Positions 808 to 59,532 of a DNA stretch of 64,000 nt are shown piece after piece. Source of the DNA: Euprymna scolopes (Eukaryota). The notes beneath the pieces are model-generated. The model did not search any database. It worked only from the letters and a program-made list of their open reading frames with translations, and was not told the origin of the DNA. The first letter of the stretch is position 1; the number at the start of each line of letters is the position of its first letter. Both the position numbers and the translations under genes were made by a program. Location: the NCBI GenBank assembly GCA_053919585.1, contig CM132784.1. One strand, 5' to 3'.

Positions 808-2871
808 TCTCAGGTGTAGAATCGTCAATCAATGAAAGGAAAATGACAACGTTTCTTCTGCGTTATTCCCTTTTATTTTCGAGATCGAACATTTGCACGC
901 AACAGCTGAGTCTTGCTGCAAGTTAACAAACAGCTGCGACTTACGAGAAGATCATCATGAAGACCAGGCGATTTTCATGATTTTTATTCTAGAAGTCCAA
1001 TTCATAACGACATTAACTTTTTGGAGGTTTTACGACGAGGTAAATAGTCACATATATGATTCTGACCAGGCTCAGCGTTGCTTAACTTCGGTGACCTAAC
1101 GAGAACCGGTGTGTCAATGTGATTATGGCGTATATTTTCAAGTTTCAGGAGAGATGGAAAACAATTATAGATTAGGCAATTCGTAAGAATAACAGTCTGA
1201 TTTTCATAAAGTAATGGATGCAATAGTATAATTTGACAAAGATAGTTTTCAGGGGAGATGGTCAATTATAGATTAATTGAGTGATGCGTATACATAAAAG
1301 TCGGATTTACAGAAATGTTTTGCTCTATTGGTTGTTATTAAAATGGAAGAGTGACTGATTCACTGTTGCCTGAGGTATATGATCTTGCATTCTGTGAAGT
1401 TATAGGAGGTCCATTCTCCCAGAATTTACCTTCTCGCCATTTGAGAAGGAATTAGATTATTGTTAATCACCCGAGTGGCCCTTATCGGGTAATGCTGAGG
1501 GAAGTCAAAGCATTTTTGCAAGGAAGCCTGCTCCCCCCCTAGAGCACTAGTTTTCAAACCACACTTTTCCAGCCTTGTATCACATTTCCCCGTGACGGCG
1601 AGGGAAAATAAATATCGAATCTTCAGGACAGATTGAAAAACACCATCCGTAAAAATACGAGTCTGGTTCTCATAAATAATCAAAGCTACCCAAGAACGCT
1701 ATGCCCTTCGAACCGAACTCAGTCAAAAAAAAAAAAAAAAAAAAAAAAAAAACTGACAATATAAAAAAAAAAACTTTACCTTTGAAGCTAGACAAATAAG
1801 AAATGTTATAGCAAGATGGTACAATCGAAAGAATCATTATTCTTAAAGATAGGACCCATCGCACCTCTTCCGAGTCGCTTCAGCTCCTACCCCCACCCGA
1901 GGGAATTCACACAATCATGCTTGGCCTGAATTGCTATGCAAATCAGTTAAGATTCTCATGCCGATAAACGCAAGATTCAAAATCAACTAAAAGAAAAAAA
2001 AAAAAGAAAAAAAGAAAAGCAAAAAAAAATTAAGATTACGAAATTACTACGAAATAAAAAAGCAAAACATAAAAGTCCCCCGCCTCCGATTTCTCGGACG
2101 TCGACTAAATCAACTAAAAGAATTGTTTAGGAAAAGCTTATTTGGCGATTCTCAACCCCGAATCTACTTTCATACCAGTCTCCATCTCCCCGTTACCCGT
2201 TTCGATTAACAAAGCCAATTATTTTTATCGTTTTATTCGCGCGCAATTTCGTCCCCGCCCATCACGCCTTTGCCTTTTTACGTCTCTCCATAAAAACGAC
2301 TGCGCAGTCGCAAACCTTCACAGGCAGACAGACAACAGCCATTCTGTGTCTTGCAAGACATTAGAACCGATATATAGTTAAACCACCATGACCTACTACA
2401 CTTCAACCACACATACATAAATACAGAAAGATATTTGAGATTTATATTTTAATAAACCATCCGGTTCACTATTTGATTTTGGTGTTTTTGTTTTTTTTTA
2501 AATTATTATTAAATATCTTATACTTTCTCCTTTATCTAACCCCTTCTCTCCTATATTACTTATCTGCTTCTCCATAAAGACCAACTGTAACATAAAGTTG
2601 AGTTTAATTTGGCGTTTAGGCAGTACGTCCATTATTCAGTACAAAAAGGATACTACTAGCTCTTTGAGGTTTGATAATAGTCACTGATTGGACCAATGAA
2701 CGATGTTGCTAAATGATCATAATTTAACAAAATATTATACACCGTTACTCAGTTTTTTAAAATTGTATAGATTATATAGAAAGTAAAAGACTATGTAGTA
2801 AAAAAAGAAAGAATATTAAAAAGGAAAAGAACAAAGATACTTAATGGAAAGGGAAATTACAAATGAGGGAA

Positions 2872-3262
2872 AGAAATATAGAAATTGTCCCAGACAAGGC
2901 ATGGAGCCACTTGATATAAGGAGCTAATAAGAACGAAATACGATTATCACAAGACAGGAAATGACTTTTTGCCTTAATCTTGAAAAGACCAAAATTATAT
3001 GTGGAAAGAATATAGTCAGCAGGAAGAGAGTTCCACAAGTCTTGCCACAATAACAGGAAGTTGTATTAGAACAAGGTATCAGAACAACGAATTGAAGGAG
3101 ACCACTAGATCAACGTTAAATGAGCTTGAACATGTGGAGAAGAGAATAAATCTGACAATTTTGATAAGCACATGTCATAATAGTATTTATAGAAAAGACT
3201 GAGACTAATAATATTACGTCTATGTGAGAAAGGTTGCATAGGGGAAGAAAAGCTAGACCAAT
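2872..3262 (-). mobile_element. CR1-group LINE 3' fragment
   Basis: Minus-strand 'QPFSHRRNI', 'LFYKYY' and 'LWNSLPA' motifs, shared with the other LINE copies. Confidence 0.75.
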
Positions 3263-3439
3263 TACAGGTATGTTGCTGAACCCCTGAAATAGAACAGGGG
3301 GGAAAATAATGAGAAACGCGAATAAAAATGTTGAAGGACAGAAAAATAAGTTGAAGAAAGAATAAACCGGAGAAAAAGGAGAATGAAAACAAAGATGAAA
3401 AATAGAAAGAAGGGTAGGCTCTCTCTTTCTCCCCCCCTC

Positions 3440-3600
3440 TCTCTCTCTCTCTCTTCACTGATTTATTATATTGTATCCAATATATATAATAATGATTTCA
3501 AAAGTTAAAAGAAAATGACTTCCGTGTCATCAGCTTGAATCGAAACAAACAGCGTTCCAGCCATAATCGTTATTTAGCGCTCCAACCTTTGTCATTACTA
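3440..3600 (-). mobile_element. Fragment of non-autonomous Helitron-like family H3
   Basis: Aligns by eye with 57295-57400 and, reversed, with about 11015-11100. Confidence 0.5.
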
Positions 3601-3603
3601 GAC

Positions 3604-3774
3604 CTATGACAACAGCATATTCTTTTCATTGTTTTAACTCTCTAGTATATATCCGACACAGTTAGACACAATTAATCAATCGAGGATCACATCACTCTAC
3701 ATAAAAAAACATAAGATATAAATGGATATATACCTGAGAATCAAAACAAGGAAAAGAATATTCTGTTGTCATAG
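3604..3774. repeat. Fold-back inverted repeat with ~50-bp arms
   Basis: ctatgacaacagcatattcttttc (3604) is nearly the reverse complement of gaaaagaatattctgttgtcatag (3751-3774). The match extends inward. Confidence 0.75.
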
Positions 3775-3977
3775 TCGGAGTCATTACCGAAGAAAAACGG
3801 CTTTAAACTAGAAATATATTTGCACGTATGTTCAGAAGTCAATCGATTTACTATTTTTTTTCAATATCGGCTGCTTAACTGCTATTTTAACAGGCTAAAA
3901 GATAAATCGAAAATGTTCCCGAGGACAAATACCTAGTTTAAAGTCTGTAGGCAAAATATTCAGAGAGGAGCTCGGTA

Positions 3978-4003
3978 AAAACGTTTCACACACGCACACT
4001 AGG

Positions 4004-4056
<53 letters not shown>

Positions 4057-4083
4057 CCCTGGTCTGCGTGTGTGAAACGTTTT
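3978..4083. repeat. Inverted repeat (~30 bp) enclosing (TA)n
   Basis: aaacgtttcacacacgcacactagggca ...(TA)n... tgccctggtctgcgtgtgtgaaacgttt. Confidence 0.85.
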
Positions 4084-4713
4084 TCACTCCAAACAAGGCA
4101 CACTGACACTTTAAAGTAGAGAGCTACTATCTGGAACATAAGTTGCAGGGACATCGTGAAGGGAGATGAGCAGCAAGATGTTTGTTTACATTCAACTACA
4201 TTTTGCATATCAGTACAGTTGGGAAAGCAGAATCCTGGAAGGGAGTTCCAAAGTCTAACAGTTTCTTTCCCAGAACTGCTAGAGTAGAAGGCTTTCTTGC
4301 ACCTAGGGTTCTCTAATATGTAGGGGTGGGATTCACTTGCTTGTCGGGTTTGTCAGATATATTTAGGTTGAGGGGATACAAGTTCTTGTAGTTCGTCAAA
4401 GCATTCACCATTAAAATACTTTTAGCAAAAGCAAAGGGATGCAACATTTCGTCGATGGGACAGAGGTTGAAGCTTAGGTGACAGTTTGGGACCTATCAGG
4501 TTGGCTACTCTCTTTTGAACCCTATCCAGGAGGGAAAGACTAGTAGCAGATGCACCAGCCCAAATGTGACAACAATACTCCATACATGGGCAAATGGTGG
4601 CCTTATAGAGGTACATGATACTTTCAGGCGTAGGTAGGTTTCTAGCACAGTAGAGAGAGGCCACCTTCTTCGCAGTGGTCTTAGCAATGCCCTCAATGTA
4701 TGTTCCAACTCAT
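4078..4713 (-). mobile_element. CR1-group LINE family A, 5'-truncated copy
   Basis: ORF 4422-4664 reads 'YLYKATICPCMEYCCHIWAGASATSLSLLDRVQKR...LSHRRNVASL', closely similar to 19145-20062. The 3' UTR is shared too. Confidence 0.92.
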
Positions 4714-9040: not shown

Positions 9041-10989
9041 TCATAAGTTTTAAACCAAATTTTTCTCTTTTATTATGAAGCTTATAGAGCAGTCAATGAA
9101 AAAAAAAAAAAAAACTAAAATAGAAACCACATTAAGCCCAAGAAATATAACGACAAGGTAGCAAATAATTGATATAAATTTTCTAGTTGATAGAAAAGAA
9201 AATCAGTTGTCTGCCTCTATTTTTCGGTCTTTTCGTTTTGTAAAACTTCCTCAAGTTTTATTACTTGTGTATACCATACACGAACTTTAACTGGTCTGTC
9301 TACCCGTTGGAACTCATTTTGTCTCACGGAAGATGCGTTAAATTTGATTACGACTATTATCCATTTCGGCTTAATGATTTGTTCTAAAATCAAGCTGGAT
9401 AACGAAAATAAATTCATCACTATGACCAATTTGCGACACTGGCTATGTATTATACATTATTCAATCTAAAATAAAAAATACAAATTTTAATTTTTTATAA
9501 AAGTAACCGAACTTTTGTAAACATCTGTCTTGTTTACATTCGCCTGACTTGGCTAACTAGTGATATATTCGACAAAAATTCTGTACAACGATATTATGCT
9601 AAATCGGATACAGAAGGTGTTGTTTTTCTTTTACCAGACCGATCTTGATGACTATTAGAAAAGTTGTTCACACCATTATAATTATATTAGTTATTCATTC
9701 AAATGTAGCTGCAGTTTTTATTACGTTAGAAGGGCCTCGCAAATATTAAACAGAGTCAAACAACACGTGCCCAGAAAAAAAAAATAACCAGGACAAATGT
9801 TTATCATCGGATGTTCTGAACAATGCATACGGGTCTTCCATCGCAGAACACCTAATAAATAGTCGAGCTTGTGTCTCCGATTTGAGTATTATCTTATTCT
9901 TCAAACTAAGTAAGTCGCACTCTCCGTTTCACCTTAAGATTTCAGAAACTATTTATATGATGTGTTTGCGATATTCTATAGGCAAACAAGAAATCTTTTC
10001 AGACTTAATTTAGTTTTTATTTAAGTGTTTTTCTCTTTCACTCGTTGTAAGTCTCACAGCATAAGTATTGTTGTCCTTTTAACCTTTACATTGATTTAGC
10101 TCTGTTGAACGAGTTTCAAAATCGATTATCTATCCATATCATTGGTTTATTTTCATCCATCATTCTTAGTTCAAATAAATATGATCTGTTCGTCACAATA
10201 AAGAATCTATTACTACAAATATATTATTTATTTATATAAACATTATTCGCTACATGTGCATACATGTTTTGCCTTCGAGCTGGATTTTACACTTAAATTA
10301 GATTTTAAATAGAAATCATTTTATATAAAATCCGGCTGTTATTTTCCACAGAAAAAGTGGATGAAACACCATTCTCTTTTTCCACCCCTTTTGCTTTTCA
10401 AATAACGGAACACTTTCGTATGAAAATAAATGCTATATACAATCTGGTTTCCTTGTAAAGATTCGGCCTGATGACTATGCATTTCGAAAGAAATCTCAAC
10501 AAAAATATGTATGCACATATGTAGCCAATAGTGTTTTAATAAAAGAATAGAAAATATACTGCAATAAAGCACCACTTGTTATTGAGCACTTTTTGATTAA
10601 CACCGGATTTTCATTAGGCTTATATCTAAGAAACCGAACCAATACAATCCTTGTATTTTATTTTAGAGGCGGCGAACTTAAAAGTGACAGCACTATTTTC
10701 TTTAATTGCAGATTTGGCTACTATCGACTATTTGGAATTAAGTTCTGTTTAAAAATTCATCACAAGGTTTCCGCAAGATGGAGCCACATTCCACACAATG
10801 CGATATAATGCGATTTAGCGAGAGAAATATTTGATAAACAAATAATTTCACGAAATGGACTTGTCAACTGTCCACTTCGTTCGTACGATTTAATCCTATT
10901 AGATTATTTTCTTTGCGGATATGTAAAGTCTCATATCTATGCTGACGAATCAGACACAACGTACCATAGTGCATAAAACTAATAGTAAC

Positions 10990-22764: not shown

Positions 22765-23141
22765 ATTAATTTATTTTTTATTTCTGACTATTATTCTCAT
22801 CTTTATCTTATCATCTTCGGGGCCCCTGGCGCAGTTGATAGAGACGTTGAATCTCTACAGTTCCAGATGAACATTGTCTGAAGATAGCGGTTTCAATCCC
22901 ACCCAAAGCGTGCCAGAGGTTAATTGGCCAAAAAATGTGGTGAAACGACAACAACTACAGATGGCAGTGATGGCTGAGAATGCAGTTAGAAGATTTGAAG
23001 TTCCTATCCGTCGCGGTTACCACCTGACGAAGGCCAGAGGAATAGTTGGCCGAAACGTTGTGAATAAACAAAACCAATAAAAGATCAGAAACAACAACTA
23101 ATAAAGATGAGAATAATAGTCCGAAATAAAAATAAATTAAT
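22765..23141 (+). mobile_element. tRNA-head element with Penelope-type minimal hammerhead, bounded by ~41-bp inverted repeats
   Basis: A box TGGCGCAGTTG (22827), B box GGTTTCAATCC (22889), HHR at 23021-23062. 22765-22806 is nearly the reverse complement of 23101-23141. Confidence 0.8.
23021..23062 (+). ncRNA. Minimal type I hammerhead (Penelope-like, dimer type)
   Basis: cac-CTGACGA-a-ggcca-(10 nt)-tggcc-GAAAC-GTT-gtg. The core is intact and stem III is reduced to the AACGTT palindrome. Confidence 0.85.
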
Positions 23142-59221: not shown

Positions 59222-59305
<84 letters not shown>

Positions 59306-59309
59306 TGGT

Positions 59310-59393
59310 GGATGGTTTTTGGCCTGATGAGGTGATTTTCCCTGATAGGGGGTCATTGAAACACGTTTGCTAATGTGTAGCCAATAGCTCTCC
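59310..59393 (+). ncRNA. Full-length type I hammerhead ribozyme
   Basis: Stem I ttggc (59319-23) pairs with gccaa (59380-84), extended by ggtt/agct and gga/tcc. CTGATGA at 59324-59330. Stem II spans 59331-59357, then GAA, then the 7-bp stem III acacgtt-tgct-aatgtgt. The GUA site predicts cleavage after 59379. Confidence 0.88.
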
Positions 59394-59491
59394 AACAATC
59401 AATATATTGCTCTGTTTCATGCATTGAGCACTCTTTGGAATGACATATTGTGTTGTTGTTATGAGTTACTGAAAAATTCTACCAACAGTAT

Positions 59492-59532
<41 letters not shown>

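What the first reader, a model, noticed from the sequence alone, without database searches (positions are those of the whole stretch)
59303..59495. Near-canonical full type I hammerhead inserted inside a (TA)n microsatellite
The core nucleotides are all present (CUGAUGA, GAAA, GUA site). Stem III is 7 bp with a 4-nt loop, stem II is long, and stem I is extended and interrupted. The one visible deviation is a G-U pair instead of G-C closing stem II. The ~190-bp unit is flanked on both sides by (TA)n (59224-59302 and ~59495-59528), which suggests TA-repeat targeting. It has no visible tRNA head. It is the best candidate in the window for an active monomeric ribozyme.
Basis: partly seen in the sequence, partly recalled or inferred. 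Interest (0 to 1): 0.8.

Follow-up and report, generated by a model that had tools for sequence, protein, structure and literature searches.

The report
Hammerhead ribozyme in truncated Penelope-like retrotransposon
The 190-base unit is the cut-off 3' end of a Penelope-like retrotransposon that landed in a TA microsatellite; its hammerhead ribozyme motif is real and conserved across related families, but both the ribozyme and the TA targeting are known habits of this transposon class.

Summary
Window 59319-59384 carries a complete type I hammerhead: CUGAUGA, GAAA, a 7-bp helix III, and a GUA site with cleavage after A59379. (TA)n lies on both sides.

It is not a free-standing unit. It is a 5'-truncated copy (59308-59495) of a Penelope-like element (PLE). 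Longer copies of the same 99%-identical family continue upstream into an ORF with RT motifs and a GIY-YIG endonuclease.

The hammerhead is the only conserved island between the 3' UTRs of sister PLE families (66-69% aa identity):
- The core is invariant; only N7 varies.
- Helices II and III covary.
- A descriptor for it finds 8,272 copies in the genome, against 0 for the reversed control.
- No Rfam hammerhead model detects any of them.

In the lineage's register, one unpaired nucleotide flanks helix II on each side. The true 10.1-11.1 pair is G59332-U59356. It is G·U only in this family.

Of the family's long-form 3' ends, 90% run into A/T repeats. Inverted 5'-truncated partners and an 88-bp "tail" match published PLE insertion anatomy.

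Self-cleavage is not shown. RNA contigs span the site uncleaved, and the raw reads were too few.

About half of the copies start exactly at the foot of helix I. This is unexplained.

Verdict: a new member of a known kind, of modest interest.

The parts
59225..59302 (.). (TA)39 microsatellite, the 5' flank of the insertion and part of the presumed target
59303..59307 (+). TGGTG junction nucleotides that do not match the family sequence (origin unknown)
   Evidence: the family reads ..GTTTCGTGGATGG, the window reads TGGTGGTGGATGG
59308..59495 (+). 5'-truncated copy of a family-A Penelope-like element: its last ~100 bp with the hammerhead, plus the 88-bp tail
   Evidence: 99% identical copies on many chromosomes; the same sequence continues upstream into UTR and ORF in longer copies
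59309..59323 (+). Helix I 5' strand (UGGA . GGUU . UUGGC), extended and interrupted by two 1x1 loops
   Evidence: centroid fold; helices 1-3 are 70-85% paired across families
59324..59330 (+). Core box CUGAUGA (C3-A9). N7 = U here, and C, A or G in sister families
59331..59357 (+). Helix II with its flanking unpaired nucleotides G59331 and U59357. The conserved 10.1-11.1 pair is G59332-U59356 (G·U here, G-C in 19 of 23 relatives). Loop base A59345 is C in most copies
59358..59360 (+). Core G12 A13 A14
   Evidence: invariant in alignment A1
59361..59378 (+). Helix III, 7 bp (ACACGUU/AAUGUGU), loop UGCU, closed by A15.1-U16.1
   Evidence: pair 69-80: UA 11, UG 8, CG 2; pair 72-77: UA/AU
59379..59380 (+). 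Predicted self-cleavage site, between A17 (59379) and G1.1 (59380)
   Evidence: Position follows from the hammerhead fold; cleavage was not observed
59380..59394 (+). Helix I 3' strand (GCCAA . AGCU . UCCA)
59395..59407 (+). Segment up to the 'short-form' end. In many copies and in inverted arms the element stops here (..CAATCAATATA) and runs into (TA)n
59408..59495 (+). 88-bp 'tail' (TGCTCTGTTTCATGC...CAACAGTATAATA). It is identical to the sequence that follows the hammerhead in tandem units
   Evidence: 413 exact ends; published PLE tail concept in PMC8557442 and PMC11167929
59496..59528 (.). A(TA)16 3' flank

Best explanation
Window 59308-59495 is a dead-on-arrival, 5'-truncated insertion of a young, high-copy Penelope-like retrotransposon (PLE). 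[quoted passage not shown]

The element carries a type I hammerhead ribozyme near its 3' end, that is, in the pseudo-LTR of tandem copies. In the master elements the hammerhead most likely cuts read-through or tandem transcripts after GUA. This is inferred from the PLE literature, and the hammerhead may also serve as a folded recognition module for the element's RNP.

Reverse transcription starts at one of two sites downstream of the cleavage site. The short end is about 25 nt past it and the long end about 113 nt past it, which makes the 88-bp tail. Priming is on DNA nicked in (TA)n/(TAA)n tracts. That is why the copy sits inside a TA microsatellite and why many copies have an inverted partner.

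Shown here:
- the element's identity;
- conservation and covariation of the hammerhead;
- the TA association;
- the tail and inverted-copy anatomy.

Inferred: actual self-cleavage, its role, and the priming mechanism.
For: - **Copy number and identity.** The 193-bp query has more than 1,000 first-look candidates, and the scored copies are about 99% identical on many chromosomes.
- **Link to a PLE ORF.** Longer copies share upstream UTR and an ORF with YRDDG, CNCK..C..C and FYIGST..TFKERFYGH. A sister family has an intact 716-aa ORF flanked by two hammerheads 4,568 bp apart. Its C-terminus hits Pfam GIY-YIG at 27.6 bits, above the 22.6 cut-off. Homologues and atlas clusters carry RVT_1, GIY-YIG and HTH_animal.
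- **Conservation of the hammerhead.** It is the only similarity between the 3' UTRs of families A, B and C.
- **Covariation.** In 23 hammerheads from 5 subfamilies the core is invariant, N7 varies, 83% of cells are paired against 27-49% when the partners are slid, and helices II and III show compensatory changes. RNAalifold finds the same three helices on its own.
- **Enrichment.** The descriptor gives 8,272 hits against 0 for the reversed control.
- **TA association.** 373 of 413 long-form ends are followed by at least 12 A/T bases, while (TA)>=8 runs cover 1.5% of the window.
- **Insertion anatomy.** Inverted 5'-truncated arms lack the tail and forward arms carry it. This matches PMC8557442 (Fig. 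2 legend; (TA)n targets) and PMC11167929 (two RT start sites define the tail; both strands are cleaved and extended).
Against: - No Rfam hammerhead model matches, even at E<=10 on the isolated motif or on sister families.
- Pfam RVT_1 does not hit the ORF directly. RT identity rests on motifs and on homologues.
- No cleavage evidence: RNA-library contigs span the site intact and only 4 raw reads mapped.
- Family A has G·U at 10.1-11.1 and an unpaired nucleotide on each side of helix II, which could lower activity.
- The fold is not unusually stable (z = -1.05 to -1.6).
- Published work on an anole PLE found that hammerhead cleavage is dispensable for insertion in vitro (PMC11167929).
Confidence: 0.88

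Rival explanations
1. The hammerhead-plus-tail module (~190 nt) is a discrete short RNA, a non-autonomous SINE- or retrozyme-like parasite or processing product. Its 5' end is defined at the foot of helix I, and it is mobilised in trans by the PLE protein. It would then not be a randomly truncated copy.
For: - The exact 26-mer at the helix I foot has 468 copies.
- Adding 5 upstream nt drops the count to 241, and a 26-mer 55 nt further upstream still has 233. There is a sharp step at one point.
- In a sample of 20 of the short copies, 18 are truly truncated there.
- Summed k-mer depth over the module is 4-11x that of the upstream UTR in three RNA libraries, against a ~2x genomic copy ratio.
Against: - The module is 99% identical to the 3' end of ORF-bearing copies and has no diagnostic differences.
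- I saw no promoter or tRNA head.
- Most short copies abut an inverted arm, which fits two-strand priming and joining rather than a separate element (PMC11167929).
- Contig depth is a poor measure of expression.
- The unit is not tandemly repeated as retrozymes are.
Confidence: 0.2
2. The hammerhead-like motif is a chance or decayed resemblance carried along by a repeat, with no ribozyme function.
For: - No Rfam hit.
- G·U at 10.1-11.1 and extra nucleotides beside helix II.
- Unremarkable folding z-score.
- No cleavage seen.
Against: - Core positions are invariant, and only N7 varies, across subfamilies whose ORFs are 66-69% identical and whose UTRs are otherwise unalignable.
- Compensatory changes occur in helices II and III.
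- A homologous motif sits at the same place in a 48%-identical element from a marine metagenome.
- Hammerheads are a known conserved PLE feature (PMC4209133).
Confidence: 0.05
3. It is a Tc1/mariner-type MITE or other DNA transposon that inserts at TA.
For: TA sequence on both sides.
Against: - No terminal inverted repeats.
- A graded series of 5' truncations, all ending at the same 3' end.
- An RT/GIY-YIG ORF upstream in longer copies.
- The flanks are long microsatellites, not a TA dinucleotide duplication.
Confidence: 0.01

Closest known systems
Hammerhead ribozymes of Penelope-like elements (Cervera & de la Pena 2014, PMC4209133)
   Same: - A type I hammerhead in the pseudo-LTR / 3' region of an RT + GIY-YIG element.
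- A long helix II and a short proximal helix I.
- An extra nucleotide between A9 and 10.1.
- G10.1-C11.1 conserved in the lineage.
- Thousands of mostly truncated copies per genome.
   Different: - Published metazoan PLE hammerheads are 'minimal': helix III is absent or is 1-2 bp and palindromic, so they act as dimers. Here helix III is 6-7 bp with a 4-6 nt loop, like the fungal and protist PLE variants that work as monomers.
- There is also an unpaired nucleotide between 11.1 and G12.
- Family A has G·U at 10.1-11.1.
Canonical EN+ PLE insertion architecture (Craig et al. 2021, PMC8557442; Frangieh et al. 2024, PMC11167929)
   Same: - Partial tandems (pLTR).
- An upstream inverted 5'-truncated copy.
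- A one-sided 'tail' extension.
- A preference for (TA)n / AT-rich targets.
- A Cys-rich linker before GIY-YIG.
   Different: - The tail here is 88 bp rather than the 30-40 bp described.
- A variable (ATA)n run lies between the element end and (TA)n.
- There is a sharp 5'-end hot spot at the foot of helix I.
- I did not determine the clade (Neptune, Nematis, Poseidon and so on).
Metazoan non-LTR retrozymes (Cervera & de la Pena 2020, PMC7229834; Li et al. 2026 preprint, 10.64898/2026.07.22.740005)
   Same: Small AT-rich repeats carrying a type I hammerhead, thought to derive from PLE pLTRs and to be mobilised by PLEs.
   Different: - Retrozymes are short tandem repeats (~170-400 bp) that give circular RNAs.
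- The window copy is a single dispersed fragment collinear with an autonomous element.
- I saw no tandem array of the 190-bp unit.
Rfam Hammerhead families (type I, II, III, HH9, HH10; family list from my own knowledge)
   Same: Same catalytic core and three-helix junction.
   Different: No Rfam hammerhead model scores this motif or its G-C sister families at E<=10.

Membership tests
Hammerhead ribozyme, type I | Conserved core C3 U4 G5 A6 N7 G8 A9 / G12 A13 A14 / A15.1-U16.1 / H17 | tested here: met
   Read directly at 59324-59330, 59358-59361 and 59378-59379. Invariant in 23 relatives, with only N7 varying.
Hammerhead ribozyme, type I | Three helices around the core, with helix I open-ended, supported by covariation | tested here: met
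   83% of cells paired against 27-49% when slid; compensatory changes in helices II and III; RNAalifold recovers helices I, II and III.
Hammerhead ribozyme, type I | G10.1-C11.1 pair directly adjoining A9 and G12 | tested here: not met
   One unpaired or mismatched nucleotide lies on each side of helix II (columns 34/62, 48% paired). The next pair is G-C in 19 of 23 sequences but G·U in the window's family.
Hammerhead ribozyme, type I | Match to a curated covariance model (Rfam hammerhead families) | tested here: not met
   No hammerhead family reached gathering score or E<=10.
Hammerhead ribozyme, type I | Site-specific Mg2+-dependent self-cleavage leaving 2',3'-cyclic phosphate and 5'-OH ends | not testable with these tools
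   RNA contigs span the site. Only 4 raw reads mapped, and no read-end pile-up could be assessed.
Penelope-like element (EN+) | Single ORF with RT followed by a C-terminal GIY-YIG endonuclease | tested here: met
   GIY-YIG: Pfam PF01541 at 27.6 bits, above the 22.6 cut-off. RT: motifs FDIxDYYPSI, GVSMGS and YRDDG in the 716-aa ORF, and RVT_1 on homologues and clusters. RVT_1 does not hit the ORF itself.
Penelope-like element (EN+) | Pseudo-LTRs from partial tandems, each carrying a hammerhead | tested here: met
   L049 has hammerheads at 897 and 5465 flanking the ORF at 1138-3288. After the hammerhead, copies either end or continue into the next unit's start.
Penelope-like element (EN+) | Inverted 5'-truncated partner copy and a one-sided tail | tested here: met
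   head-to-head arms. The inverted arm ends at the short site and the forward arm carries the 88-bp tail.
Penelope-like element (EN+) | Phylogenetic placement of the RT among PLE clades | not tested
Non-LTR retrozyme | Short head-to-tail tandem repeats, each with a hammerhead, expressed as circular RNA | tested here: not met
   The window copy is single. Family copies are dispersed and collinear with an ORF-bearing element. Circular RNA was not testable.

The most novel reading that the evidence does not exclude
The folded hammerhead defines the 5' boundary of a minimal ~190-nt retrotransposition template. About half of all family copies begin within 5 nt of the first paired base of helix I. 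This could mean that a short hammerhead-plus-tail RNA, or an RNP-imposed reverse-transcriptase stop at the ribozyme, is a regular intermediate of PLE integration. That would give the long-puzzling PLE hammerhead a structural role in template definition, not only a cleavage role.
Probability: 0.2. Interest if true: 0.6.

Novelty: new member of a known kind. Interest (0 to 1): 0.3.

Why it matters
- **It explains the finding.** The motif is a retrotransposon fragment, and the TA flanks are the element's target preference.
- **A large blind spot in annotation.** The genome holds more than 8,000 hammerheads of a lineage that Rfam models miss completely. Ribozyme annotation based only on covariance models will undercount such motifs in this genome, and perhaps in related ones.
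- **A natural test set.** This PLE lineage of an animal (probably a cephalopod) has a stable helix III, so it should fold as a monomer. It also offers natural G-C, G·U and core-variant sisters. Together these allow a test of whether PLE hammerheads really cleave in vivo and what they are for, which is still an open question in the PLE literature.
- **A mechanistic lead.** The sharp 5'-end hot spot at the ribozyme's foot is a concrete, testable clue to PLE integration.

Tried and rejected
- **Rfam scans.** I scanned the whole window at gathering score, the region and the isolated motif at E<=10, and 12 sister loci. No hammerhead hit appeared. The only hits were spurious miRNA/snoRNA-like matches on TA repeats and palindromes.
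- **Pfam on whole ORFs.** Nothing was found. GIY-YIG appeared only when the C-terminal 150 aa were scanned alone. PDB sequence search found nothing.
- **Long open frames.** Frames of 1,024-1,089 aa reported by the genome search turned out to be translated (TA)n/(ATA)n repeats, not full-length ORFs.
- **RNA evidence for cleavage.** Three RNA-library contig sets cover the element, and single contigs bridge the cleavage site. The one raw-read run gave 4 reads. This gives no support either way.
- **Covariation within family A.** Copies are too similar (~99%) to be informative, so I used sister families instead.
- **MITE / TA-dinucleotide transposon reading.** Rejected: no TIRs, and a 5'-truncation series.
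- **Relatives outside the genome.** Several 40-48% identical elements from marine metagenomes lacked a clean canonical motif under my descriptor. One has a homologous motif with CCGAAGA (U4C), one a classic palindromic helix III, and one a U3-A8 core.
- **Species identity.** I did not establish it. The genome size, the at least 46 large contigs and the mollusc-labelled RNA runs suggest a decapodiform cephalopod, but this is inference only.

Full report
**Observation**

(TA)n occupies 59225-59302 and 59497-59528.

Between the two tracts lies a complete type I hammerhead:
- Helix I proximal is UUGGC (59319-59323) paired with GCCAA (59380-59384). It continues through two 1x1 loops into GGUU/AGCU and UGGA/UCCA.
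- The core box CUGAUGA is at 59324-59330.
- Helix II spans 59331-59357.
- GAA is at 59358-59360.
- Helix III is 7 bp at 59361-59378, with loop UGCU.
- A17 is at 59379, so the predicted cut is 59379|59380.

The thermodynamic centroid of both the window copy and a full-length copy is exactly this three-way junction. The fold is not unusually stable, however (z = -1.6 and -1.05). A loose hammerhead descriptor finds 0.14 motifs per shuffled window.

**What the 190-bp unit is**

The unit has more than 1,000 first-look candidates in the 5.9-Gb genome, and the scored copies are about 99% identical on many chromosomes.

Aligning their flanks shows that the window copy is 5'-truncated. Most copies continue upstream into a shared AT-rich UTR. 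The longest continue into an ORF. That ORF shows:
- RT motifs (YRDDG; the DFLDV region);
- a Cys cluster (CNCKIPSTCPMNNKC);
- a GIY-YIG core (FYIGST...TFKERFYGHKSSF).

A sister family has an intact 716-aa ORF with the same layout. Its last 150 aa pass Pfam's GIY-YIG threshold at 27.6 bits against a 22.6 cut-off. Homologues at 40-48% identity, and the nearest atlas clusters, carry RVT_1, GIY-YIG and HTH_animal. Pfam RVT_1 does not hit the ORF itself, so the RT call rests on motifs and homologues.

In that sister copy, hammerheads lie 240 nt upstream of the ORF and again 4,568 bp further on. This is the pseudo-LTR arrangement of Penelope-like elements.

The protein search found 234,988 first-look candidates genome-wide. 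It also found many inverted-plus-tandem clusters.

**Is the hammerhead real?**

Family A copies are too similar to each other to be informative. I therefore used sister PLE families from the same genome, whose C-terminal ORF is 66-69% identical.

Between the 3' UTRs of families A, B and C, the only detectable similarity is the ~70-80 nt of the hammerhead.

I aligned 23 hammerheads from five subfamilies (A1). All core positions are invariant except N7, which is U, C, A or G. N7 is the one core position that is free in hammerheads generally.

For my named structure, 83% of cells pair, against 27-49% when the partners are slid by 1-3 columns. The covariation score exceeds all 500 shuffles. Individual pairs show compensatory change:

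| Helix | Pair (columns) | Pair types seen |
|---|---|---|
| II | 36-60 | UA 19, CG 4 |
| II | 37-59 | GC 12, AU 10, UA 1 |
| II | 38-58 | AU 21, GC 1, GU 1 |
| III | 69-80 | UA 11, UG 8, CG 2 |
| III | 72-77 | UA 4, AU 5; unpaired in 14 |

RNAalifold, with no guidance, returns the same three helices.

A descriptor for the lineage (GGCCTGANGA N20-34 GAAAC N12-22 GTAGCC) has 8,272 genomic matches. The reversed control has 0.

A 48%-identical element from a marine metagenome carries a homologous motif at the same position. Its helix I is different (CCAC/GUGG). Its helix III is 6 bp with the same UGCU loop, and the downstream sequence is also homologous. Its first box reads CCGAAGA.

**Register of helix II**

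It appears as G·U, A-U, A·C, C·A and U·U.

The next pair in (59332-59356) is G-C in 19 of 23 sequences, and G·U only in family A.

The extra nucleotide between A9 and 10.1 is a published hallmark of PLE hammerheads, together with a conserved G10.1-C11.1 (PMC4209133). The additional nucleotide before G12 is not part of that description.

No Rfam hammerhead model scores the window motif, or the G-C sister families, even at E<=10.

**TA flanks, tail and inverted partners**

The family's long-form 3' end (…CAACAGTATAATA) occurs 413 times. In 373 cases (90%) the next 12 bases are all A/T, mostly (ATA)n(TA)n or (TA)n. By comparison, (TA)>=8 runs make up 1.5% of the window.

5'-truncated copies also abut TA or AT-rich sequence on the 5' side, as here, or abut an inverted partial copy whose far end runs into (TA)n.

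After the hammerhead, copies do one of two things:
- They end about 25 nt past the cleavage site (…CAATCAATATA).
- They continue for 88 more bases. Those bases are identical to what follows the hammerhead in tandem units.

Inverted arms use the short end. Forward arms carry the 88-bp extension.

This is the published PLE insertion anatomy: pLTRs, an upstream inverted 5'-truncated copy, a one-sided 'tail', and (TA)n targets (PMC8557442). The biochemical account matches as well. There are two reverse-transcription start sites downstream of the hammerhead that delimit the tail, both DNA strands are cleaved and extended, and AT-rich sites are preferred (PMC11167929).

**Function**

By analogy with the PLE literature, the hammerhead is proposed to process tandem or read-through transcripts into unit-length RNA. 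The RNA may then be circularised (PMC4209133).

In the one PLE studied in vitro, cleavage needed the element's protein and was dispensable for insertion (PMC11167929).

Here helix III is long and stable, so the motif should fold as a monomer. This differs from the minimal, dimer-type hammerheads described for animal PLEs, and resembles those of fungal and protist PLEs (PMC4209133).

I could not show cleavage:
- PolyA RNA-seq assemblies from three studies contain the element.
- Single contigs bridge 59379|59380-equivalent positions.
- The only raw-read run gave 4 reads.

The window copy lacks everything upstream of helix I. It would be transcribed only by read-through.

**An unexplained extra**

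The counts of exact matches along the element are:

| Probe | Exact matches |
|---|---|
| 26-mer at the foot of helix I | 468 |
| Same site extended by 5 upstream nt | 241 |
| 26-mer 55 nt further upstream | 233 |

Of 20 sampled copies that lack the 5 upstream nucleotides:
- 2 are point mutants;
- 3 abut AT-rich DNA, like the window copy;
- 15 abut an inverted arm, whose own break point varies while the forward arm's start is fixed.

So roughly 44% of family copies begin within 5 nt of the first paired base of helix I.

Summed k-mer depth in three RNA libraries is 4-11x higher over the hammerhead-plus-tail than over the upstream UTR. This is only a weak hint.

Three readings are open: a short RNA template, a stop of the reverse transcriptase at the folded or bound ribozyme, or a fixed joining point in two-strand priming.

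**Verdict**

The thing is a truncated Penelope-like element with a conserved, probably monomer-competent hammerhead, inserted in a TA microsatellite.

All of the main features belong to a known kind. The particular hammerhead architecture, its invisibility to Rfam, its copy number and the 5'-end hot spot give it modest added interest.

This scan had also noted other hammerhead-bearing repeats in the same window. I did not use those notes as evidence.

Noticed in passing
window 23021-23062 (+): A classic Penelope-type minimal hammerhead: CAC CUGACGA A-GGCCAG..UUGGCC GAA ACGU U|GUG, with a palindromic 2-bp helix III and a bulge after A9. It is a different lineage from the one studied here, and another first-stage note (s1-279909) also flagged it.
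   Followed up: partly
window 10468-10530 (+): A decayed copy of a sister hammerhead (family C/E-like): CTGATGA...ATGTATGCACATATGTAGCCAATA. Helix III and the cleavage site are intact, but the GAAAC box is lost.
   Followed up: partly
G000 genome-wide; examples L098 and L106 (C2:29172600-29172750, C4:68501510-68501660): Near-perfect head-to-head palindromes of two hammerhead arms joined 2-5 nt from GGATGG. They recur at many loci. About half of all family-A copies start at this same point, the foot of helix I.
   Followed up: partly
3' ends of family A, e.g. L008, L010, L030; listing: A variable run of (ATA)n, from 0 to more than 10 units, lies between the element's last bases (AGTATAATA) and the (TA)n tract. 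It might reflect slippage at the start of reverse transcription.
   Followed up: no
L085:10-75 and 4281-4346; L088 and L089 upstream of their ORFs: Related PLEs (48% aa identity) from marine metagenomes carry a homologous hammerhead whose first box is CCGAAGA (C instead of U4), in two distinct elements. This is either a tolerated core variant or a dead ribozyme retained for another reason.
   Followed up: partly
L087 about 2010-2060 (upstream of ORF 2201-4360); L086 minus strand at 36 and 2471 (reverse-complement coordinates): Other relatives show the U3-A8 core covariation known from Schistosoma PLEs (L087) and a compact hammerhead with the palindromic helix III ACAGAUCUGU (L086).
   Followed up: no
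L050:1447-4695 and L045:2192-4417: Kilobase-long (TA)n and (ATA/ATT)n tracts translate as open frames of 700-1,000 aa (YIYIYI..., IIIIMII...). These inflate the 'open frame' figures of the genome search. PLE copies are embedded in these giant microsatellites.
   Followed up: yes
window, whole: The window is 34% G+C, holds 857 N, and has 23 (TA)>=8 tracts (1.5% of bases).
   Followed up: no
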